IMG/VR virus record: IMGVR_UViG_3300049846_000628
Location: 1-64,000 of that record
Strand: one strand, 5' to 3'
Length of the DNA stretch: 64,000 nucleotides
Part shown: positions 13,587 through 25,735 of the stretch, piece after piece
Layout of the letters: each line of letters starts with the position of its first letter
Numbering within the stretch: position 1 is the stretch's first letter
Notes under the pieces: model-generated
What the model saw: only the letters and a program-made list of their open reading frames with translations
Told to the model about the DNA's origin: nothing
The model's database searches: none
Translations under genes and position numbers: made by a program

Positions 13587-14381
13587 TTACTGACTTTGAG
13601 GCACAGATGATTCGGTTATCCTACCAAGATAGGGATCGTAGTTCATCAGATCATCAATGTTCATCTCATAACCCTGCCTCTCCCAGAACTGAAGCAATCC
13701 ATCGTGACTACTACGATGAAAGACATCAATATGCTCTGGATGAATTGAAGATCCTAATTCAATTCTATAAAGAAAAAGTGGGATTGAAAATGTATTTCCA
13801 GAATTATAAATCAAATCATCAGCAACCGCTCTAGGTCTTACACCCTGATCTAACTTATACTTACCATCACGAACGTGAAATTTTAAAAGTTTTTCAGCGT
13901 GATGACGATTAATCAAATAACAAGCTGTTGAAAAATCATTTACAAATCTCTTATGAAGTTTAACGTGTAGATCTCCAGTACATATAATTGCAATCTGAAC
14001 TACATCCCAATCATAAGGAATTTTAGAAACAAAATCTGCCCAAGTAAAATTCCAAAATCTTACAATTTGAAGATCTACATCATCCTCCATGATGATTGCA
14101 TATGGAGAATCAGATGTATCATACCAATGTTTGATTGCCTTAAGGTGAGATGTGGTGCATCCAATCTCACCAGATGTCATGTTTTCTGGATAACGACCCT
14201 TAATAATATCGCTAAGATCATCAGTTCTACCATCAAACGCAGAGATGCGTTCGTAATTCTCAATCTCCCAATATTTAAACTGATCTTCCATATATTGTTT
14301 TCTTTCCGGTTGCCCATCTAGATTTAAATAATAAATTGGACCAATATTTTTGAGTTTGTAAGCAGATTTATTTTTGTCCAT
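13587..14381 (-). CDS. Glycosyltransferase family 25
   Basis: YYLNLD...RISAFDG...GEIGCTTSH...IIMEDD. Confidence 0.85.
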   Translation of the reverse strand: MDKNKSAYKLKNIGPIYYLNLDGQPERKQYMEDQFKYWEIENYERISAFDGRTDDLSDIIKGRYPENMTSGEIGCTTSHLKAIKHWYDTSDSPYAIIMEDDVDLQIVRFWNFTWADFVSKIPYDWDVVQIAIICTGDLHVKLHKRFVNDFSTACYLINRHHAEKLLKFHVRDGKYKLDQGVRPRAVADDLIYNSGNTFSIPLFLYRIELGSSIHPEHIDVFHRSSHDGLLQFWERQGYEMNIDDLMNYDPYLGRITESSVPQSQ

Positions 14382-15187
14382 TATAGTTTACTCCACCTTT
14401 CTGGAATTAAATCTTCTGTATTTTTATCTTGATTTCCTTCACCAAACCATTTGATAGGTGCAATTACATTATCAGAATTAGATAACCAAGCACCCCACCA
14501 CGAGAATGATGAGTTCGCAATAATATGATGAGAACATAGACTCATTAAACAAAGATCAACATAGTGGTCCTGTGACTCAGAGATCATAAACCGATCGCCA
14601 GAAAATAGTGGTTGCGAATTACACCATTCTGGATCATCCGAGAACACAACTACTGGAAGAGAAGAATCCATCTTAGAAAGAGCATTCTCATAATAATCAA
14701 GATCAAGAGCAGTATGATTTGGATTCTGTAGATAGTCTGTGCGACGAATATGAAGACTGATTGCTTTTCCAATAGATCCCATCATTTCTTTACAAGGATC
14801 TAAAATTTCATCCTTGAAAGAAAAATCTTCACGAATCTCATCTTCAATGTGTTTGAAATATTTTTCAGATTGAAAAAATCCAGCAAGAGTTATTTCATCT
14901 GGACACATATTAAACAGAGTTTGGTCAAAATGAAAATGCTTTTCCTCTGCTACAGGTGCATATCCCCTATCAAGAAGTTTGATATTATGTGGTAGTACAT
15001 ATATCATCTTGAAAGGGTAGAAAAGTTCAATCTTTAAGTCAAATCCATATGGGTCTTTGACTACTTGATTATGATTAGGAATACAAAAATCATATCCACG
15101 ATTTCGGGCAATGCCTCTCAATGAGGCATATTGGAACATTTGATTTCCAAGTCTTCCCAATTTTCCAAGATAATTAAACGCTAACAT
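14381..15187 (-). CDS. GT11 alpha-1,2-fucosyl/colitosyltransferase
   Basis: GRLGNQMFQYA, SLHIRRTDY, IIANSSFSWWGAWL. Confidence 0.9.
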   Translation of the reverse strand: MLAFNYLGKLGRLGNQMFQYASLRGIARNRGYDFCIPNHNQVVKDPYGFDLKIELFYPFKMIYVLPHNIKLLDRGYAPVAEEKHFHFDQTLFNMCPDEITLAGFFQSEKYFKHIEDEIREDFSFKDEILDPCKEMMGSIGKAISLHIRRTDYLQNPNHTALDLDYYENALSKMDSSLPVVVFSDDPEWCNSQPLFSGDRFMISESQDHYVDLCLMSLCSHHIIANSSFSWWGAWLSNSDNVIAPIKWFGEGNQDKNTEDLIPERWSKL

Positions 15188-16001
15188 TCAATTGACTCCT
15201 TCTCTCCTTAACATAGTTTTGATCCTCATAATACCTTATTATAGCATCTTTATCTAACTTTCTAATTGTCTGCCATAGATTATGATTATCCATAAACTTT
15301 GGATTATGATAATGTGAATTAAAGGTGCGAGCGTGATCAAAGTGGTAGACCATATCATTGACTCTACCAACACGATATCCTAAAGCTTGAAGACGATAAT
15401 AATATTCACAGTCTTCTGCACCCCAAGAAATGAAGTTCTCATTCCACATATAAGAGTCAATATAAACTTGACGCTTGATCATTTGACCCCATCCCATCAC
15501 AGATGGTTGCAATTTACAATTAGGTTGCAGAACATTCAAATCAAACTTTGATTGAATAAAAGCATCAAAGAGTGGAATAGGATAGTCAACTGCCCATTGA
15601 TAAACACCACAACCATAAGGATAAACTGCATCAAACTCACCCTGCATAATCATATTATATGCAGTCACATAACTTGATACTGGATAAACAACATCAACAT
15701 CGTAATTATAAACGACTTCAGTTTTTGATGCTAGAAGAAGGTCATTTAGAATACGAGTCTTATAAAAGAATTGATTGTTTGATTGCTCAAAAATATGATA
15801 CAGATTTGTTGGAATATCACCGAAGATCTTTTGAATGACTGGAAGTGCTTTATCTTGAAAGACTGACTGCGTATCATTTTCCTTAATGATAATTGGAGAC
15901 TGTGGAAAATGATGAGTGATGTAGCTGATAGATGTAATCACATTTTTGAGTCGGTCTTCACTCTCAATCCGACAAGGTATCAAGAATGTAAGATTATTCA
16001 T
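15174..16001 (-). CDS. GT2/GT7-like glycosyltransferase
   Basis: YDVD DxD motif; ENFISWGAED. Confidence 0.75.
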   Translation of the reverse strand: MNNLTFLIPCRIESEDRLKNVITSISYITHHFPQSPIIIKENDTQSVFQDKALPVIQKIFGDIPTNLYHIFEQSNNQFFYKTRILNDLLLASKTEVVYNYDVDVVYPVSSYVTAYNMIMQGEFDAVYPYGCGVYQWAVDYPIPLFDAFIQSKFDLNVLQPNCKLQPSVMGWGQMIKRQVYIDSYMWNENFISWGAEDCEYYYRLQALGYRVGRVNDMVYHFDHARTFNSHYHNPKFMDNHNLWQTIRKLDKDAIIRYYEDQNYVKERRSQLNVSV

Positions 16002-16845
16002 ACTGTACCTCAACCCAATTATCAGGCAGCAAGTCACTCATCGTATAGTGGTTGTACATAGATCCAAACCAAGGATTAGGAGCAACAATAGGTTGTGTTG
16101 GATTTTCAATCAACCAAGCACCCCACCAACTCATTGTACTATTAGCAATAATACCACCAGTGCAAAGAGACATCATACACAAATCAAAGTAAGGAATCAA
16201 TGATTGTTGTCTTCCTTGAAGGGTATCACAAGTTTGAGGATATCTCTCAGTATATTCAGAAAGCATAAAGCGATCATCTTGAAATAGATCCTGCTCCTTA
16301 CACCATTCAATATCATCAGAAAAGACTAGCACTGGAGATTCCTTATCAAAATGTGCTAGCGCCTTTTCATAATAAGAAATTGCACAAGCAGGATGTGCTT
16401 CTGGTTTGACTAGATAATCCCCACGACGAACGTGAAGAAAAATTGGATTCTCTAGATCATCCATAATTTCTTTACAAGGATTCAAGATATCATCCTTAAA
16501 AGTGTAATCTTTACGGATAACATCTTTCACATTTGAAAAATATTTTTCTGAAGTGAAGTAATCGTGAAGATTTACATTATCTGGACAATTATCAAAAAAC
16601 TCTTGAATGAAGTGAAACTCCCCTGTAGAAATACTTTGCGCGTTTAGAATTCCAAAGTTACTTTCTTGGACTGTCTCCATCTTAAAGCAATCAAACAGAC
16701 CATAGTTAGAATCACCATAACTGTCTGGACGGGGAATCAACCAATCAAACCCTCTGTTTGCAGCAATACCCCGCAGAGCGGCATATTGAAACATCTGGTT
16801 TCCCAGCCGCCCATTTGACCCTAAACGATTATAACTTATAGTCAT
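15994..16845 (-). CDS. GT11 alpha-1,2-fucosyl/colitosyltransferase (second copy)
   Basis: GRLGNQMFQYA, LHVRRGDY, IIANSTMSWWGAWL. Confidence 0.9.
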   Translation of the reverse strand: MTISYNRLGSNGRLGNQMFQYAALRGIAANRGFDWLIPRPDSYGDSNYGLFDCFKMETVQESNFGILNAQSISTGEFHFIQEFFDNCPDNVNLHDYFTSEKYFSNVKDVIRKDYTFKDDILNPCKEIMDDLENPIFLHVRRGDYLVKPEAHPACAISYYEKALAHFDKESPVLVFSDDIEWCKEQDLFQDDRFMLSEYTERYPQTCDTLQGRQQSLIPYFDLCMMSLCTGGIIANSTMSWWGAWLIENPTQPIVAPNPWFGSMYNHYTMSDLLPDNWVEVQYE

Positions 16846-16846
16846 T

Positions 16847-17464
16847 TCACTTCCTCACATAAAGAGCATCTCCCCAAAGAGTTCCTGCCCAATCAGTCTC
16901 TACTCTTTCCATATTATAATCAACAAGAAACTTATCAAGGTCTTCTACAAAAGCATTTCCTTCATAAAGTTCATCACGATTAATTTCACAATAAACATAA
17001 TCAACGTGCTTCAAAGTTTCGGCACCACCCTTAAGAACTTCAAGTTCATATCCCTGCACATCCATATTAATAAAGTTGAAGTTCTGAGTTTCTTCAGCAA
17101 AACTATCCAGTCTTTTCATTTCAACTTCTTCAAGTCCAGGAAATCCAACACCAGGATGAAGTTGAAGATGCACTTTGGGTTTCAACACAGAGCTGCTAAT
17201 GAGATCATTATCACTCAAATACATCGTAACATTTTTTTCCTCATTACCAAGAGCAACCTGATATGCAGTAATATTTGCATTCACATCAGACATTCTTTGC
17301 TCAAGAATATTAAAGTTTAGACTTACAGGTTCAAACATAATAATGTCTTGAATACCGTTGTCCACATACTCTTCAATTTCTTGTCCGCGATGAGCACCAA
17401 TATGGATGATTCCCTTGATATCCATATTGTATTTTTTCACCATATTGGTAAAACTTAAAATCAT
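16847..17464 (-). CDS. FkbM-family methyltransferase
   Basis: IHIGAHRG, FEP, NMDVQGYELEVLKG. Confidence 0.85.
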   Translation of the reverse strand: MILSFTNMVKKYNMDIKGIIHIGAHRGQEIEEYVDNGIQDIIMFEPVSLNFNILEQRMSDVNANITAYQVALGNEEKNVTMYLSDNDLISSSVLKPKVHLQLHPGVGFPGLEEVEMKRLDSFAEETQNFNFINMDVQGYELEVLKGGAETLKHVDYVYCEINRDELYEGNAFVEDLDKFLVDYNMERVETDWAGTLWGDALYVRK

Positions 17465-18282
17465 AGTTCTTGCAAGTAAGTTTTGTAAATGTAATCTTCG
17501 TTGATTAGAAAATCTTTGACTCTCTCTAAATTTTCTTTTACTGCATCCAGTTTATCATAATAAAGGTCTGGAGTCAATTGAGAGACATCAAAATCATCAG
17601 TAAGCGTAATAATTCCTTTGGGATTAAAAAACTTTCCAATATCAGGAGACCCATAATAAATTGGTATGGTTCCTGTAGAGAAACAATCTTGAATCTTTTC
17701 AGTAAAGTAAGATTCGTAGGAAGCGTTTTCAATAGCAACTGAAAACATATAATCTGCTAGACCTTCTTCCTTGGATTGAATCTCATTAAATCCTCTTCCA
17801 TAAAAATCAACTTTACCCTGAAGTCTTTGAGCCCAGGATAAGCGATATTGATGACCCTCACACATTACCTTATTAGAGCAAATCATAGAGACTAACTTAG
17901 TCTTATCATAAAGTTTTGGGTCAGTAATCCAACTCCCATATAAAGGAGCAAACTTAAATTTAGGATGTAGTTTAAGTAGGTCCTGATGATGAGTAAAAAT
18001 TGCATCATAAACACGGATATAGTGAAGATAATTTCTCTTCACATCCTCAATAACGTCTGGGCAAATATTTGCAGACTCTAGTAACCAAGCATACTTCTTT
18101 TTACTGTAATCATCATCAAAGGCAAGACCAATGTAGCGATCTACATAAAACGTTTCTTCTGCACCAGAGTCAACCCACTCTATAAACTTTGATTCCTGTT
18201 TGTGAATGGAAGATGCTTTGTTTCCATTATCGTAGTTGTTGAACCCACCACCGACTAAATTATATTGTTTTTTCTCAGTCAT
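17461..18282 (-). CDS. GT10-like fucosyltransferase
   Basis: YMFSVAIEN...YFTEKIQDCF..GTIPIYYG. Confidence 0.8.
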   Translation of the reverse strand: MTEKKQYNLVGGGFNNYDNGNKASSIHKQESKFIEWVDSGAEETFYVDRYIGLAFDDDYSKKKYAWLLESANICPDVIEDVKRNYLHYIRVYDAIFTHHQDLLKLHPKFKFAPLYGSWITDPKLYDKTKLVSMICSNKVMCEGHQYRLSWAQRLQGKVDFYGRGFNEIQSKEEGLADYMFSVAIENASYESYFTEKIQDCFSTGTIPIYYGSPDIGKFFNPKGIITLTDDFDVSQLTPDLYYDKLDAVKENLERVKDFLINEDYIYKTYLQEL

Positions 18283-18307
18283 ATATAATATAAAGAATGA
18301 TTTGAAT

Positions 18308-18988
18308 ATGAAAGTAATATCTTTTTCTTTATGGGGAGATAATCCCAAGTATACAATCGGAGCAATTAGAAACTCCGAACTTAAAGAAAAATTTTATCCC
18401 GATTGGGAAATGAGAGTCTATCATAATGACTCTGTACCTAATTATGTATTAGAGCAACTAGAGAGCAATGGTGTTGTTTTAGTCAACACTGGAGTAGATC
18501 AGGGAGTATGCAACGCTATGTGGCGTTTTGCTCCTGCATCAGAAAAAGTAGAGTGTTTTATTTCCAGAGATTGTGATTCACGTTTGTTTGAGCGTGATGT
18601 TGCAGCAGTTGAAGAATGGTTAGAATCTGGAAAATGTTTTCACATTATCAGAGACCATCCTGGAGGTCACGCTTGGGAAATTAGTGCTGGTATGTGGGGT
18701 GCTAGAGGATGTTTTGTTGAGGATATTCAAGAAAAAATAGACCAATATATTCAAACAAGTTCTTGGGTAAATGACCGCGCAGTAGACCAAAGATTTTTAC
18801 AGGAAATTATTTACCCAAGAGCTTTAGATAGTCTATTTCTTCACGATGAATATTTTAATTATGAGGGTATAGGTGTTCCAATTAAGAGAGATCGTAAGTT
18901 AGATGACTTTGCTTTTATTGGAGAACCCTTTGACGAAAATGATAATCAGTTATCTAATCACCGCGATATGATTATTCAAAGATACTGA
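18308..18988 (+). CDS. Glycosyltransferase-like hypothetical protein (opposite strand)
   Basis: MKVISFSLWG..KY, MWRF, FISRDCDSR, HIIRDHP, AGMWG. Confidence 0.75.
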   Translation: MKVISFSLWGDNPKYTIGAIRNSELKEKFYPDWEMRVYHNDSVPNYVLEQLESNGVVLVNTGVDQGVCNAMWRFAPASEKVECFISRDCDSRLFERDVAAVEEWLESGKCFHIIRDHPGGHAWEISAGMWGARGCFVEDIQEKIDQYIQTSSWVNDRAVDQRFLQEIIYPRALDSLFLHDEYFNYEGIGVPIKRDRKLDDFAFIGEPFDENDNQLSNHRDMIIQRY

Positions 18989-19683
18989 AGAGCATCTGGA
19001 AGAATTTTCTGCCGATACAAATCCATATTACGTTGATAAACTTCGTGATCCTTTGGATGAGATGTCGCTACTTTACCAGCTGGAAGAGAACACACTTTAA
19101 CGTGATGTAAGTCTTTTACCTTATAACCAAACTGATAGGCACGATAAGACATATCACCATCAGCACAATAGTATTCATATTCGGGGTTATACATTCCTAT
19201 TTCCCTGAATATTTTTTTACGATACAGACCATAATTCATTACAATTTCCCCACCACTGGCGGCAATGTTACACAAACACCACCCTTCAGTATGATCTCTA
19301 CCTTTCAACCACTCTGGATTTTTTGCATCTTCAAGAGATCCATACTTCCAATTAAAAAGATAGAAGTCGTGATTTGATTGAAGTTCTAGAAATACTTCAT
19401 TCCATTCATTACACAAAACCACATCATCATTCCACTGAGCAATGATTTCGTGAGTTGCATTTTGAATACCCAGATTCATAAAATGGGGATAAGAACTCCT
19501 ACCACCAACCTCAATCAATTTAATTTGTGGATGATTAAGTTGTTTAATATAATCTATAGTCCCATCAGTACTTCCACCATCAACTAAAACAAGCTCTAGT
19601 CTATCATCGGAAAGAACAGTATTAGCAATTAAGTTGGGGAGCATTCCCACACGATTTAATGTTCCAGTTACGATACTAATCAT
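18976..19683 (-). CDS. GT2 glycosyltransferase
   Basis: LVDGGSTDGT, WNDD, YCADGD. Confidence 0.85.
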   Translation of the reverse strand: MISIVTGTLNRVGMLPNLIANTVLSDDRLELVLVDGGSTDGTIDYIKQLNHPQIKLIEVGGRSSYPHFMNLGIQNATHEIIAQWNDDVVLCNEWNEVFLELQSNHDFYLFNWKYGSLEDAKNPEWLKGRDHTEGWCLCNIAASGGEIVMNYGLYRKKIFREIGMYNPEYEYYCADGDMSYRAYQFGYKVKDLHHVKVCSLPAGKVATSHPKDHEVYQRNMDLYRQKILPDALQYL

Positions 19684-20453
19684 TTGTTTAAGTAATCTAC
19701 AAATTGAAAATTATTTACGCCCATTATCAATGTTAATAAACTAACATTTGAAAAACTATACAAGAAGTGATTACATTTTGAAAGTAGGTAAACACTAGAC
19801 AATACTTCTTCATTTACCTGAGAGCGATTTGAGCAATTATGATGTATAGATTGCGATCCACTGCTAATTTGAAGAGAATGGTCATAAACTATTCTACTTC
19901 CATATCTATCCAACAAACAATCAAGATAATATTTGTCGTCTGTCGCTAAAAATATTTTTTCTTTACCTGTATTATCAATTAAATCAAATATTGTTTCAAT
20001 TTTTATTTCAGGTAGTTCTTCTTTTTTATCAGTACCTCTTACTTGTACTCCTAAAGTATCTTTATCAATTCCCAAATTTATTCTTTTTGCTTCAAACTTT
20101 TCCAGATATTCATCTTTAATCTTAAGAATATTACTATAGACTTTATTTTTTATTTTTATATTATCGATGTTTGCCGGAGTATGAGCATTATATTGACCTT
20201 GATAAATTTGATTTGAAAAATATCTTTCTAACCACCAAGACCCAACATTATAAGTCTTATTAGTTTTTGGCGAAATATTATCAAATAAACTTAGCGTTTG
20301 ATCCTCAACTACTTCAATATTAAAATTATCATTTATAACATAATGCTCTAGAGCCATATCAATAATTCCACATACAATAGAACAAAATCCTTTATAAGGA
20401 TAATTGAACCTTGGATCAGTATATGATATATGTCCAGTCTCAGTCAATTCCAA
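19680..20453 (-). CDS. NodZ/GT23-like fucosyltransferase
   Basis: GVQVRGTDK, IFLATDD, LLSKC..FSNVS. Confidence 0.65.
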   Translation of the reverse strand: MELTETGHISYTDPRFNYPYKGFCSIVCGIIDMALEHYVINDNFNIEVVEDQTLSLFDNISPKTNKTYNVGSWWLERYFSNQIYQGQYNAHTPANIDNIKIKNKVYSNILKIKDEYLEKFEAKRINLGIDKDTLGVQVRGTDKKEELPEIKIETIFDLIDNTGKEKIFLATDDKYYLDCLLDRYGSRIVYDHSLQISSGSQSIHHNCSNRSQVNEEVLSSVYLLSKCNHFLYSFSNVSLLTLIMGVNNFQFVDYLNK

Positions 20454-21132
20454 TTACCTCATTGAGACCTTTTGAGTGAATTGACTCTGGATAATTTCTA
20501 ACATAATTATGCCTATAAATTTTTGGTTTACTCATTTTATAAGAATTAACCATATCCAAAAATCCAGTTTGCATCATATGAATCTCTTCGGCATTTTCAA
20601 GTAGTTTAATATAATCAAACATCTTAAATTGATAGTCATTACGAATTACTTTATATTCACTTGTAATCTTACTCATATCAATAGTATATCCTCTTTTGGG
20701 ATCATCTAAAACAAAGATATACTTTTCACCATCAGGATTTAGAGTTTTGCAAACTTCATCTTCCTTTTCAAGATCTCTCTCAAAATAGAACTCATTAAAT
20801 CTAATTTGAAAATCAAGACCGGCAAGATAATAAAATGCTTCATCAAAAGTCATTCTATCCAGACAACTATCCAAATTCTCAAATCCAGGTTTGATTAGGT
20901 TAGTTTTAACAGTACTATTATTGTCAACAAATCTTATAGCATCTTCTTCAACATCAAAATTGAAAATTTCCAAATTACTTAAATCACGATACATATAACT
21001 CACATTATCATAATAATGTGTATAGCAAAAAATTACTATGTTATCGTATTTCTTACAAAAATGGCGGACCATACCATTACAAATGATATGATCACCTAGA
21101 CCCAAGTGATGATGAATATACTTGAGAGACAT
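20440..21132 (-). CDS. Putative glycosyltransferase (GT9-like N-terminus)
   Basis: HHHLGLGDHII motif. Confidence 0.5.
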   Translation of the reverse strand: MSLKYIHHHLGLGDHIICNGMVRHFCKKYDNIVIFCYTHYYDNVSYMYRDLSNLEIFNFDVEEDAIRFVDNNSTVKTNLIKPGFENLDSCLDRMTFDEAFYYLAGLDFQIRFNEFYFERDLEKEDEVCKTLNPDGEKYIFVLDDPKRGYTIDMSKITSEYKVIRNDYQFKMFDYIKLLENAEEIHMMQTGFLDMVNSYKMSKPKIYRHNYVRNYPESIHSKGLNEVIGID

Positions 21133-21133
21133 C

Positions 21134-21478
21134 TCACTCAACTCCCTTATAGAGTTTTACCGAATCCTCACGAAGAGTTCTTCCAGTAGCAATAGCATTA
21201 TCCACAAGAAGATTTACAGCCTGTACAAGACGTGGACGTTTTACTTTGAAGCAGATATCAATCTTGCGTTTCAATTCAGCAATTTCTGCATCAGTCTTTG
21301 CTTCTTGAATTGCATCTTCCAACATCCACATACGAGTATGAAGAATAGAAAGTTTCTCAATCACCTCACCAAGATTATCCGTCTCAATGTATTCAACATC
21401 TGGAATTTCTCTACGTGAAAGAACTTCATCAATAGTTTCTTCAATACACTGGTCAATTAAATCACCAAACTTACTCAT
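21134..21478 (-). CDS. Hypothetical helical protein (DUF4254-like)
   Basis: IEKLSILHTRMW...KIDICF..RPRLVQAVN; family from recollection. Confidence 0.5.
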   Translation of the reverse strand: MSKFGDLIDQCIEETIDEVLSRREIPDVEYIETDNLGEVIEKLSILHTRMWMLEDAIQEAKTDAEIAELKRKIDICFKVKRPRLVQAVNLLVDNAIATGRTLREDSVKLYKGVE

Positions 21479-22647
21479 AACTCTCCTAAAATAGTTTCCA
21501 ACAATTTTATATCTCTATCGGAAACAAACTGATTGTTTCCAATGTAGACTCCATTTTCATGGATAATATCCACATTCAGGTTTTCTGTTTTTCCTACAAT
21601 TGAATAGTCTTTTAAGTAAGGTTGTCTCAAAAGATTTCCACCAACAACAGGTCTATATTCAATTTTATATTTGTTTAATAGTGAAATAAGTTTGAACTTA
21701 ATTTTCTTTGTTTTACAAATAAAGGGGAAACAGAAACAACTGTTACCTTCATTATACACTATCGGGTAAAAATTGTCTTTATTTTTTTGGGAAGACATAA
21801 TTTCTACAAATCTAGAATACGCCCTGTCCCTATTATCAATAAACTTATCTAATCTATTAAGTTGGGATAGACCCAATACTGCACCAAATTCAGTATTTCT
21901 AAAATTATACCCATCACTTACAAACAGAAATGACTTTTCTATTTCTGGATTTTGATTCTGATAATATTTAAATTGATCTGAAACTCTTGCAAGTCCATGA
22001 GATCTTTTCATTTTCATCAGATCATACAATTCCCAACTATTAGTTGAAATCATACCACCCTCTACAGTGGACATATGGTGTCCAAAGTAAAAACTGAATG
22101 TAGCACCAAGACTATTTTTACCTATCTTATTTCCACTCTTATCAAGACATCCATGAGACTCACAAACATCATCAATAAACAAAGCATTTGGTAAAATCTG
22201 TTGGTATTTTTCAATCTCAGCAGGTATACCTAAAAGGTGAGTAACAAATACTAGTTTAATATCTGGATGTATCTGAGAAATAGTTTTAAGATTGTCCAAA
22301 TCAAAACTATAATTCTCAAGATTTACATCACAAAAAATAGGAGTGAGTCCTAGTTGAATAATTGGGTTAATATTAGTAACCCAAGTGCAAGAAGGAAGCA
22401 CTACCTTATCACCTTTTTTTAATCCATATTTTTCAATTATGGAAGAAACTAATAAAAAGTTTGCAGTGCTTCCAGAAGTTACAAATAAAGAATACTTACA
22501 TCCCAACCATTTTGACCACTCCTTTTCAAATCGCTCAACATTTTTACCCTGAGTAAATTTATCAGAAGTTAAAACAAACTTAGCAAGTTGAAATCTATCC
22601 CATAAAGAGATAGAATTTTTCATTAGTGGCCACCTATAGTCGGACAT
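21475..22647 (-). CDS. colD: PLP-dependent GDP-4-keto-6-deoxymannose 3-dehydratase (ColD-like; DegT fold)
   Basis: SFYFGHHMSTVEGG with His in place of the aminotransferase Lys; no E1-type Cys cluster. Confidence 0.75.
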   Translation of the reverse strand: MSDYRWPLMKNSISLWDRFQLAKFVLTSDKFTQGKNVERFEKEWSKWLGCKYSLFVTSGSTANFLLVSSIIEKYGLKKGDKVVLPSCTWVTNINPIIQLGLTPIFCDVNLENYSFDLDNLKTISQIHPDIKLVFVTHLLGIPAEIEKYQQILPNALFIDDVCESHGCLDKSGNKIGKNSLGATFSFYFGHHMSTVEGGMISTNSWELYDLMKMKRSHGLARVSDQFKYYQNQNPEIEKSFLFVSDGYNFRNTEFGAVLGLSQLNRLDKFIDNRDRAYSRFVEIMSSQKNKDNFYPIVYNEGNSCFCFPFICKTKKIKFKLISLLNKYKIEYRPVVGGNLLRQPYLKDYSIVGKTENLNVDIIHENGVYIGNNQFVSDRDIKLLETILGEL

Positions 22648-23578
22648 AATTACTCCTATTTTTCAGAAACCAATCAATAGTAATTTTTAAACCATCTTCA
22701 AGAGGTGTTTTTGATTTCCAACCAAGGGAACTCATTTTTGAAGTATCAAGTGCTCTACGGGGAGTTCCATTTGGTTTAGTTGTATCCCAAATTAATTCAC
22801 CATTATATCCAACAAGTGTTGCAACTATTTCAGAAAGTTCTTTGATACTTACTTCTCTCTCAGGACCAATATTAATGATTTCTGGATCTTCATAATTATT
22901 CATTAGAAAAACAAGTCCATCTGCAAGATCATCAGAAAAAAGAAATTCTCTAGTAGGACTTCCATCACCAAAACAAACAACACTTTCAGTATTAGAATCT
23001 TTTGCACTCACAAACTTATTAATAAAGCTTGGAATTACATGACATTGCTCAAGAATGAAATTATCATTAATACCATAAAGATTATTAGGCATTACAGACA
23101 CTGTTGGAAATCCATACTGTTCTGTATACTTTTTACACATCATATATCCAGCAATTTTTGCTAGAGAATATGAAATGTTAGTTTCTTCAAGAGGTCCAGT
23201 CATCAAGTATTCTTCTTTGATAGGAACTGGAGCGTGTTTTGGATAAATGCAAGCAGATCCTAAAAAGAGTAACTTTTTACACCCATTGCGATAGGCTGCA
23301 TCAATTACATTAGTTTGAATCTGTAAATTTTCACGAATAAAATCTGCAGGGATTGCCTTATTATATCCAATACCACCTACTTTTGCTGCTCCCAGGAAAA
23401 CATATTCAGGTCTCTCTTCAGCAAAAAAATCATCTACATCTTTCTGAATCCGCAAATCTAGTTGTGCCCTAGAGCGAGTTAACAGATTTGTATATCCATT
23501 AGATGATAAGTATCTAGAGATTGCAGATCCGACAAGACCACGATGTCCTGCAATAAAAATTTTAGAATTACTGTCCAT
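22634..23578 (-). CDS. fcl: GDP-L-fucose synthase/ColC-like epimerase-reductase
   Basis: [36 protein letters not shown]. Confidence 0.92.
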
Positions 23579-24569
23579 AAATGCACATATCCTCAACTAA
23601 TTGTTTAAAGGAAGTCTTTGGTGTCCAACCAAGTTTCTCCTTTGCCTTTGTGGCATCACCTAATAAAGTCTCTACTTCAGCAGGTCGGAAATATTTAGGG
23701 TTGACTCTGACGATGGTTCTACCCGTATTTTTATCAATACCAACCTCATCCAATCCTTCACCTTCCCAGACAATACTCATACCAAAGTAAGGTGCTGCCT
23801 CTTCAACAAACTCACGCACCGAATACTGCTCTCCAGTTGCAATTACAAAATCATCTGGAGTTTCTTGCTGCAACATCAACCACATCGCTTCCACAAAGTC
23901 TTTAGCGTGTCCCCAGTCTCGTTTTGCATTCAGATTTCCCAACTCAAGAATCTGTTGCTCTCCTGTAGAAATTCTTGAAAGAGCACGAGTAATCTTGCGA
24001 GTAACAAATGTCTCACCACGACGGGGAGATTCGTGATTGAAAAGAATACCTGTGCAAGCATACATTCCATACGATTCACGATAGTTCTTAGTGATCCAGT
24101 ATCCGTAAATCTTAGCTACACCATAAGGAGAACGGGGATAAAAAGGAGTAGTTTCGCGTTGAGGAACTTCTTGTACAAGACCGTAAAGTTCGCTTGTAGA
24201 TGCTTGGTAGATGCGTACACGATCTTCCATGCCCAGGAGACGCACTGCTTCAAGAACACGGAGAGTTCCCATACCATCGACATCAGCAGTGTATTCAGGC
24301 ATCTCAAAGGATACTTTGACGTGACTCTGAGCACCAAGATTATAAATTTCATCTGGCTGAACTAATTGAATAACTCTAACTATATTAGTCGAGTCTGTTA
24401 AGTCACCGTAATGTAATTTAATATTTTGATACAAATGATCAATACGTCCTGTATTAATTGATGAAGAACGACGAATAATACCGTGAACTTCATATCCTTT
24501 TTCCAAAAGAAACTCGGCAAGATAAGATCCATCCTGCCCAGTAATACCAGTGATTAATGCTTTTTTCAT
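23568..24569 (-). CDS. gmd: GDP-mannose 4,6-dehydratase
   Basis: [30 protein letters not shown]. Confidence 0.97.
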
Positions 24570-24572
24570 AAG

Positions 24573-24914
24573 TTAGATCCTTCCGTATGTGTCTTCAATC
24601 CTAACAATGTCTTCTTCATTGCAGATTTTTCCAAGTTGGACTTCTACAATCATTATACCATCATTTCCGCCAGTAATGCGATGTTTAGACAAAACTGGAA
24701 CAAAAATATAATCTCCAACTTTTAGTTTTTTAATGTCTTCGTTTAATTCTAATGTTCCGTCACCAGATACTACAACCCAATGCTCATCTCTTTGATTATG
24801 ATACTGCAAAGATATCTTTTGATTTGATTGCACATAGAGTCTCTTTACTTTATATCCAGTATCCTCTTTAAGGTTTTCATACCAACCCCAAGGTCTATCA
24901 AATCTTTCAGTCAT
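24573..24914 (-). CDS. Mannose-6-phosphate isomerase, type II cupin domain
   Basis: RPWGWY, ISLQYHNQRDEHWVVVSG, EVQLG..EEDIVR..D.YGR. Confidence 0.9.
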   Translation of the reverse strand: MTERFDRPWGWYENLKEDTGYKVKRLYVQSNQKISLQYHNQRDEHWVVVSGDGTLELNEDIKKLKVGDYIFVPVLSKHRITGGNDGIMIVEVQLGKICNEEDIVRIEDTYGRI

Positions 24915-25735
24915 ACCTCACAATTTGTAAAGTCTATTTGACCATTTCTAGTTGCCCAGATTGGATACTCTCTACCGTAGGTATTCCAAATTTGTGCTTG
25001 TTCTTGTCCAACAGGTACACCAGATATTCCTGCAGCATTCCAGACTGTTTCGTAAGTATCATCCTCGTGAAATGTAAAATCGTGAGTTTCTGCTTTTTTC
25101 TTCAAAAGTAAAGACCAGATAGATTGATCGTGCCTATTTTCTCTGAAGATATCATCATTTGGAAGAGTTGAAGGACTATCATCAAGATACTTTCCACCAT
25201 CTTCTACACATGCATCAATCCATTTTTGAACTAATTCACGAATCATAGATGTATTCTTCAGAAAGAAGATACCAGAGATAACCTGACGGGTCATTAGATA
25301 TTCATCACTATCACCAACAATATGACGATAAGTATCCATTTTAGTCCATTGAATTTCAGGAAGATCTAAAGTAAAGAAAACTCCCTCAGTTTCAAGACAC
25401 TCTTCATAATATTGTTTCAGTTTCTCTAGACCATTTTTATTCAACTCACAACCAGAATCCACATAAAGAAGGACATCATTCTCAGGAATATTTTCCAAAG
25501 CTTTGAGAATAAAGTAGGGTTTACAAGCATAGTATCCATAATATCTTCTGGACATTCCTACGCGAGGATTCATCATTGGTTTCGCATATTGTTCCCAGAA
25601 TAGATTATCCTCTAAATCAGATTCTCCAAACTCTTGAATAGATTCAAAGACTCCAAAATTTTCTGCTTGCTTTTTGATTCTATTCTTACCTATGAAGAAA
25701 TTACTGTCTCCAAAATAGGTCAAATGTAAATTCAT
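24911..25735 (-). CDS. Hypothetical glycosylation-related protein
   Basis: LLYVDSG DxD-like motif, ENRHDQSIWSLL. Confidence 0.55.
   Translation of the reverse strand: MNLHLTYFGDSNFFIGKNRIKKQAENFGVFESIQEFGESDLEDNLFWEQYAKPMMNPRVGMSRRYYGYYACKPYFILKALENIPENDVLLYVDSGCELNKNGLEKLKQYYEECLETEGVFFTLDLPEIQWTKMDTYRHIVGDSDEYLMTRQVISGIFFLKNTSMIRELVQKWIDACVEDGGKYLDDSPSTLPNDDIFRENRHDQSIWSLLLKKKAETHDFTFHEDDTYETVWNAAGISGVPVGQEQAQIWNTYGREYPIWATRNGQIDFTNCEV

What the first reader, a model, noticed from the sequence alone, without database searches (positions are those of the whole stretch)
21475..24914. Apparently complete GDP-L-colitose pathway in a phage
Seen: contiguous PMI-cupin, gmd, fcl/colC-like and DegT-fold genes; the last has SFYFGHHMSTVEGG and no Fe-S Cys cluster. 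Known: His instead of Lys at this position marks ColD (and E1, which has the Cys cluster), whereas perosamine synthase keeps Lys. Gmd, ColD and ColC together yield GDP-colitose, and colitosyltransferases such as WbgN are GT11. Inference: the phage makes the rare 3,6-dideoxysugar colitose, perhaps alongside fucose, to decorate virions or host LPS.
Basis: partly seen in the sequence, partly recalled or inferred. Interest (0 to 1): 0.72.

Follow-up and report, generated by a model that had tools for sequence, protein, structure and literature searches.

The report
Cyanophage GDP-colitose/fucose sugar gene cassette
A freshwater cyanophage carries a tight four-gene cassette that very probably turns host GDP-mannose into the rare sugar GDP-colitose (and GDP-fucose), and the same unrecognised cassette sits in hundreds of other phage contigs.

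Summary
On the minus strand, abutting or overlapping by a few bases, lie a PMI cupin (24573-24914), a bona fide Gmd (23568-24569), an Fcl-type epimerase/reductase (22634-23578) and a DegT-fold protein (21475-22647) with the motif SFYFGHHMSTVEGG.

- **DegT protein.** Its best sequence and fold match is E. coli ColD. Its His190 aligns with ColD His188. It lacks four of the five cysteines invariant in E1. In trees it falls on the ColD side of the ColD/E1 split, away from the Lys-bearing perosamine synthase.
- **Third enzyme.** It is not an orthologue of the E. coli O55/O111 ColC (36% identity). It sits in the general Fcl radiation (47% to E. coli Fcl), and I found no residue signature separating ColD-linked from ColD-free Fcl-type enzymes. 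The ColC step is therefore inferred from linkage only.
- **Completeness.** ManB and ManC are absent from the 211-kb genome, so the pathway starts from host GDP-mannose.
- **Spread.** Gmd-Fcl-ColD in that order recurs in 64 of 73 non-redundant viral loci. It is also in the cultured Synechococcus phage ACG-2014f, where the gene is annotated "aminotransferase".
- **Downstream.** Two GT11, one GT10-like and one weak NodZ-like transferase follow.

GDP-colitose alongside GDP-fucose is the best reading, with confidence about 0.6. It is a new member of a known kind and can be tested at the bench.

The parts
24573..24914 (-). Stand-alone cupin domain of type II mannose-6-phosphate isomerase (113 aa). 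Proposed to feed fructose-6-P into mannose-6-P.
   Evidence: PF01050 scores 92.7 bits. It matches only the C-terminal 359-467 of the bifunctional GMP/PMI model TIGR01479. The same kind of monofunctional MPI is described in cyanophage S-SCSM1 (PMC9602691).
23568..24569 (-). GDP-mannose 4,6-dehydratase (Gmd, 333 aa).
   Evidence: TIGR01472 equivalog scores 571 bits, above the cut-off of 415. It is 66-68% identical to E. coli Gmd.
22634..23578 (-). Fcl-type GDP-4-keto-6-deoxyhexose epimerase/4-reductase (314 aa from the ATG; the ORF extends to a TTG at 23596). Proposed to make GDP-L-fucose from the Gmd product and GDP-L-colitose from the ColD product.
   Evidence: E. coli GDP-fucose synthetase 1bsv scores 296 bits. 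Identity is 47% to E. coli Fcl and 36% to O55 ColC. The residues aligned with the Ser/Cys, Tyr-x3-Lys and His of E. coli Fcl are kept. It lies in a viral clade that is 27/29 ColD-adjacent.
21475..22647 (-). ColD-type PMP-dependent GDP-4-keto-6-deoxy-D-mannose 3-dehydratase (390 aa). His190 stands in place of the aminotransferase Lys.
   Evidence: Sequence match to 2gms ColD is 191 bits, against 126 for E1 and 93 for Per. The AF2 model has pLDDT 94.3, and the top 12 Foldseek matches are all ColD chains with TM 0.86-0.90. Trees are, the Cys check, and conserved ColD residues.
21134..21478 (-). 114-aa helical protein (weak DUF4254 match), start overlapping the ColD stop by 4 nt. It is a virus-specific companion of the cassette; function unknown.
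   Evidence: PF14063 scores 24.1 bits, below cut-off. It is present in 43/58 ColD+ viral loci and 2/24 ColD- loci. It lies directly downstream of ColD in 78 of 94 locus records. Atlas clusters are 100% viral.
13587..21141 (-). Downstream glycan-assembly block on the minus strand:
- unknown 233 aa (20440-21141)
- weak NodZ/FUT8-like (19680-20453)
- GT2 (18976-19683)
- GT10-like fucosyltransferase (17461-18348)
- FkbM methyltransferase (16847-17464)
- GT11 (15994-16845)
- GT with Glyco_transf_7C (15174-16037)
- GT11 (14381-15187)
- GT25 (13587-14381)

A plus-strand ORF at 18236-18988 interrupts the block.
   Evidence: Pfam hits are. The two GT11 proteins are 33% and 28% identical to the E. coli O55 GT11 gene that I take to be WbgN.
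24911..25735 (-). 274-aa protein at the head of the block. No family hit. Its homologue in S-SRM01 is annotated as a glycosyltransferase.
   Evidence: No Pfam, NCBIfam or PHROG hit. It is 85% identical to S-SRM01 gp296.

Best explanation
The window belongs to a T4-like freshwater/estuarine cyanophage. It carries a co-directional, overlapping block of genes that diverts host GDP-mannose into 6-deoxy and 3,6-dideoxy sugars.

Proposed steps:
1. The PMI cupin pushes fructose-6-P towards mannose-6-P. Host ManB and ManC then make GDP-mannose.
2. Gmd makes GDP-4-keto-6-deoxy-D-mannose.
3. The ColD-type enzyme uses PMP, with His190 as the catalytic base and no Fe-S cluster or reductase partner. It removes the C3 hydroxyl to give GDP-4-keto-3,6-dideoxy-D-mannose. 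PMP is regenerated from glutamate.
4. The single Fcl-type epimerase/reductase acts on both keto-sugars. It gives GDP-L-fucose from the Gmd product and GDP-L-colitose (3-deoxy-L-fucose) from the ColD product.
5. The downstream fucosyltransferase-family enzymes (two GT11, one GT10-like, one NodZ-like) and other GTs build a deoxyhexose-rich glycan in the infected cell.

Shown here: gene identities, family placement, catalytic-residue pattern, conserved linkage, and presence in RNA libraries.

Inferred: ColD activity on the GDP-sugar, use of the 3-deoxy intermediate by the Fcl-type enzyme, which transferase uses which sugar, and the acceptor.
For: **ColD-type enzyme**
- The best solved relative is ColD, by sequence (191 bits, against 126 for E1 and 93 for Per) and by fold (top 12 hits all ColD, TM 0.86-0.90).
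- His190 aligns with ColD His188. The residue before it is small (Gly), as in dehydratases, not the Asn-Lys of Per.
- ColD Asp159, Glu162, Ser183, Arg219, Asn248 and Arg331 are kept in the window protein and in at least 98% of 120 ColD-side sequences. Arg219 is a Cys in all E1-type proteins.
- Four of the five E1-invariant Cys are missing.
- Rooted on Lys-type Per/ArnB, the trees put the protein outside the E1 clade (99*) and with E. coli ColD (SH-aLRT 90 and 86).

**Context**
- Gmd passes its equivalog cut-off.
- Of 73 non-redundant viral ColD-like loci, 71 have Gmd nearby and 64 show the order Gmd-Fcl-ColD.
- A second, distant ColD lineage (34-35% identity) is paired with the same Fcl lineage in a different gene order in L207, L210, L215 and L218 (in L212 no Gmd was found). 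The pairing therefore looks selected.
- This is the only DegT gene in the genome. The only other SDR is dTDP-glucose-dehydratase-like, so the Fcl-type enzyme is the only phage candidate for the last step.
- Four fucosyltransferase-family genes lie downstream.

**Expression**
- Metatranscriptome contigs from four runs match the cassette with 0 mismatches, including pieces that bridge the colD/fcl and fcl/gmd junctions.

**Chemistry**
- Colitose is 3-deoxy-L-fucose. The C5 epimerisation and C4 reduction that Fcl performs would therefore yield colitose from the 3-deoxy substrate (established pathway knowledge; review PMC8987622).
Against: - Only 31-33% identity to the sole characterised ColD. No member of the 120-sequence clade holding the window protein has been assayed.
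- The grouping with E. coli ColD is moderately supported (SH-aLRT 86-90), not starred.
- Close bacterial relatives in Pelagibacter and Prochlorococcus have no Fcl-type gene nearby or in the genome. The wider clade may therefore serve other pathways or nucleotides.
- The Fcl-type enzyme is nearer to true Fcl than to ColC. It shows no residue signature shared with ColC, and close relatives work without ColD, as in S-SRM01. To my knowledge, no experiment shows that an Fcl accepts the 3-deoxy substrate.
- RNA-library contigs carry no strand information and may include DNA carry-over.
- Six cysteines conserved in the viral clade but not in E. coli ColD are unexplained.
Confidence: 0.6

Rival explanations
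1. Fucose only. The cassette makes GDP-L-fucose through Gmd and Fcl. The DegT-fold protein serves another, unidentified substrate or is a regulatory or inactive relative, so no colitose is made.
For: The Fcl-type enzyme groups with true Fcl. Related phages (S-SRM01, S-SCSM1, many IMG/VR contigs) carry gmd+fcl without ColD and are read as fucose producers. Bacterial relatives of the DegT protein occur without Fcl.
Against: The DegT gene overlaps the fcl stop codon, and 71 of 73 viral loci have Gmd nearby. All ColD catalytic and ligand positions examined are kept. Two independent ColD lineages were recruited next to the same Fcl lineage. No other keto-sugar source lies nearby.
Confidence: 0.15
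2. A different 3,6-dideoxy or amino sugar. The ColD-type enzyme does deoxygenate the GDP-sugar, but the product is finished by another enzyme. This could be a host reductase, or the Fcl-type enzyme acting with a different stereochemical outcome. Alternatively the enzyme transaminates, as SpnQ can. The end product is then not L-colitose.
For: Six viral loci have Gmd+ColD without any Fcl-type gene, and one has an unrelated SDR after ColD. SpnQ, a His-type relative, shows aminotransferase activity under some conditions (PMC8987622). No assay exists for this clade.
Against: 90% of viral loci pair ColD with an Fcl-type enzyme. The phage genome has no other candidate reductase. ColD and E1 did not transaminate under the conditions that let SpnQ do so (PMC8987622). 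The only known fate of the ColD product is colitose.
Confidence: 0.15
3. The DegT-fold protein is an E1-type (CDP-sugar, Fe-S, reductase-dependent) 3-dehydrase, or a perosamine-synthase-type aminotransferase. Public annotations read this way: JGI calls it 'CDP-6-deoxy-D-xylo-4-hexulose-3-dehydrase', and PHROG and RefSeq call it 'aminotransferase'.
For: The top NCBIfam hit is RfbH, at 182.6 bits.
Against: The RfbH score is far below the cut-off of 423, whereas true viral E1-like proteins reach 458.6. Four of five E1 cysteines are missing. The protein lies outside the E1 clade at 99* support. The catalytic Lys of aminotransferases is His here, and all four Lys-bearing proteins form a separate branch. 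No CDP-glucose pathway gene lies nearby.
Confidence: 0.05

Closest known systems
E. coli O55/O111 ColD (GDP-4-keto-6-deoxy-D-mannose 3-dehydratase; PDB 2GMS, 2R0T, 3B8X, 3GR9)
   Same: - Same fold, with TM about 0.88-0.90, and the same length (390 against 388 aa).
- His in place of the PLP-binding Lys.
- No Fe-S cysteines.
- Asp159, Glu162, Ser183, Arg219, Asn248 and Arg331 conserved.
- Sits next to an Fcl-family gene, in a cluster with gmd.
   Different: - Only 31-33% identity, with a long branch between them.
- Gly instead of Ser187 before the catalytic His.
- Six clade-specific cysteines.
- Encoded by a phage.
- Gene order is fcl then colD in both, but the partner here is Fcl-like rather than ColC-like.
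E. coli O55/O111 ColC (GDP-L-colitose synthase)
   Same: Same SDR family, with the same aligned catalytic Cys, Tyr-x3-Lys and His. Same position directly upstream of, and overlapping, the ColD gene.
   Different: 36% identity. ColC sits on its own long branch outside the clade that holds both E. coli Fcl and the phage enzyme. NF047922 scores are 304-311 bits for ColC, 412 for the phage enzyme and 546 for E. coli Fcl.
GDP-L-fucose modules of cyanophages (P-SSM2, S-SRM01, S-SCSM1: MPI, Gmd, Fcl and fucosyltransferases)
   Same: Same Gmd (79% identity to S-SRM01). Most of the flanking GT genes are shared with S-SRM01 at 84-96% identity, and two at 54-55%. The genome type is the same (T4-like cyanomyovirus with psbA).
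   Different: Those phages lack ColD. S-SRM01 has a SIS-domain protein, an NDP-sugar synthase and a phosphatase in the slot that here holds ColD and the 114-aa gene.
E1/RfbH (CDP-6-deoxy-L-threo-D-glycero-4-hexulose 3-dehydrase)
   Same: His-type PMP-dependent 3-dehydratase of the same superfamily.
   Different: E1 needs a [2Fe-2S] cluster and the E3 reductase, and acts on CDP-sugars. The window protein lacks the cluster cysteines and lies outside the E1 clade.

Membership tests
ColD (GDP-4-keto-6-deoxy-D-mannose 3-dehydratase) | Catalytic His replaces the internal-aldimine Lys of sugar aminotransferases. | tested here: met
   Window His190 aligns with ColD His188, identified from the H188K and H188N mutant chains. 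134 of 138 aligned homologues have His, and the four Lys-bearing proteins form the outgroup.
ColD (GDP-4-keto-6-deoxy-D-mannose 3-dehydratase) | No [2Fe-2S] cluster cysteines, unlike E1 and SpnQ. | tested here: met
   Only one of the five E1-invariant Cys columns is Cys (C162), and ColD shares it. The others are V, R, S and Q.
ColD (GDP-4-keto-6-deoxy-D-mannose 3-dehydratase) | Closer to characterised ColD than to E1 or Per in sequence, fold and tree. | tested here: met
   Sequence scores are 191, 126 and 93 bits for ColD, E1 and Per. The Foldseek top 12 are all ColD. The protein is on the ColD side of the split with SH-aLRT 90 and 86, and the E1 clade has 99*. Support for the ColD grouping is moderate.
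ColD (GDP-4-keto-6-deoxy-D-mannose 3-dehydratase) | Acts on the GDP-linked Gmd product (genomic coupling to gmd). | tested here: met
   Gmd lies about 1 kb upstream here, and 71 of 73 viral loci have Gmd nearby. Arg219 and Arg331 are kept. I recall these, unverified, as GDP-contacting residues in 3B8X.
ColD (GDP-4-keto-6-deoxy-D-mannose 3-dehydratase) | Catalyses C3 deoxygenation, releasing ammonia and using glutamate to regenerate PMP. | not testable with these tools
   Needs an enzyme assay.
ColC (GDP-L-colitose synthase) | Orthology to E. coli O55/O111 ColC. | tested here: not met
   36% identity to ColC against 47% to Fcl. ColC falls outside the Fcl-plus-phage clade. No shared ColC-specific residues were found.
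ColC (GDP-L-colitose synthase) | C5 epimerisation and C4 reduction of GDP-4-keto-3,6-dideoxy-D-mannose. | not testable with these tools
   The catalytic residues are present, but they are common to Fcl and ColC.
Fcl (GDP-L-fucose synthase) | Passes the NCBIfam equivalog NF047922, and keeps the residues aligned with the Ser/Cys, Tyr-x3-Lys and His of E. coli Fcl. | tested here: inconclusive
   The score is 411.6 bits, below the cut-off of 500. ColD-free phage Fcl also fall below it (443-474), and E. coli Fcl scores 546. The catalytic residues are kept.
Gmd (GDP-mannose 4,6-dehydratase) | Passes the TIGR01472 equivalog cut-off. | tested here: met
   571 bits against a cut-off of 415.
E1/RfbH 3-dehydrase | Passes the NF011936 cut-off, and has the Fe-S cysteines. 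| tested here: not met
   182.6 bits against a cut-off of 423. Cysteines absent. Outside the E1 clade.
GDP-perosamine synthase (Per) | Catalytic Lys, preceded by Asn. | tested here: not met
   The window has Gly-His. E. coli O157 Per and a viral Per-like protein have Asn-Lys.
GT11 (alpha-1,2-fucosyl/colitosyltransferases such as WbgN) | Pfam PF01531 above cut-off. | tested here: met
   The two genes score 100.1 and 77.3 bits against a cut-off of 23.9. They are 33% and 28% identical to the O55 GT11. Donor sugar specificity is not testable here.

The most novel reading that the evidence does not exclude
ColD, with its small 114-aa companion gene, may be a plug-in module that phages repeatedly insert behind an ordinary gmd-fcl fucose cassette. 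One generalist Fcl-type enzyme would then yield two donor sugars, GDP-fucose and GDP-colitose. Cyanophages would use these to put a 3,6-dideoxyhexose on the infected cyanobacterial surface or on their own virions. That sugar is so far known only from O-antigens of a few Gram-negative bacteria. Colitose would then be a widespread, virus-driven component of aquatic glycans.
Probability: 0.4. Interest if true: 0.7.

Novelty: new member of a known kind. Interest (0 to 1): 0.55.

Why it matters
Colitose is a rare, antigenically dominant 3,6-dideoxyhexose known from a handful of bacterial O-antigens. I found no paper in the searchable library that links it to any virus.

The cassette is common. More than 500 IMG/VR contig stretches encode a relative of this protein. 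It also occurs in cultured phages, where the key gene is labelled merely "aminotransferase" or mislabelled as a CDP-sugar dehydrase.

If the prediction holds:
- It adds a new class of auxiliary metabolic gene to cyanophages.
- It shows that a fucose synthase can double as a colitose synthase.
- It gives a concrete handle (ColD present or absent in otherwise near-identical loci) for asking why lytic phages remodel host or virion glycans.

It is directly testable with four small soluble enzymes and with the isolate ACG-2014f.

Tried and rejected
- **E1/RfbH reading: rejected.** Sub-cut-off score, missing cysteines, and tree placement.
- **Perosamine-synthase reading: rejected.** His instead of Lys, and a separate Lys clade.
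- **Orthology of the fcl-like gene to ColC: tested and not met**.
- **Specificity-determining residues.** I compared 79 ColD-linked viral Fcl-type proteins with 26 ColD-free ones. Only one position differs consistently (Ile against Tyr at ORF position 307), and E. coli ColC has the Fcl state there. There is no ColC-like signature.
- **A second phage reductase for the ColC step.** The only other SDR in the genome is dTDP-glucose-4,6-dehydratase-like.
- **ManB and ManC in the genome: none found**.
- **ColD structure papers.** I could not retrieve them, so the roles of Arg219 and Arg331 rest on my memory plus conservation.
- **NCBIfam has no ColD-specific model that matched**, so no curated cut-off test for ColD was possible.
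- **PHROGs** gave only 'aminotransferase'.
- **Not run:** a complex prediction of ColD with the 114-aa protein (I make no binding claim) and PADLOC.
- **Metatranscriptome contigs** cover the cassette, but they have no strand and may include DNA. They show presence in RNA libraries only.

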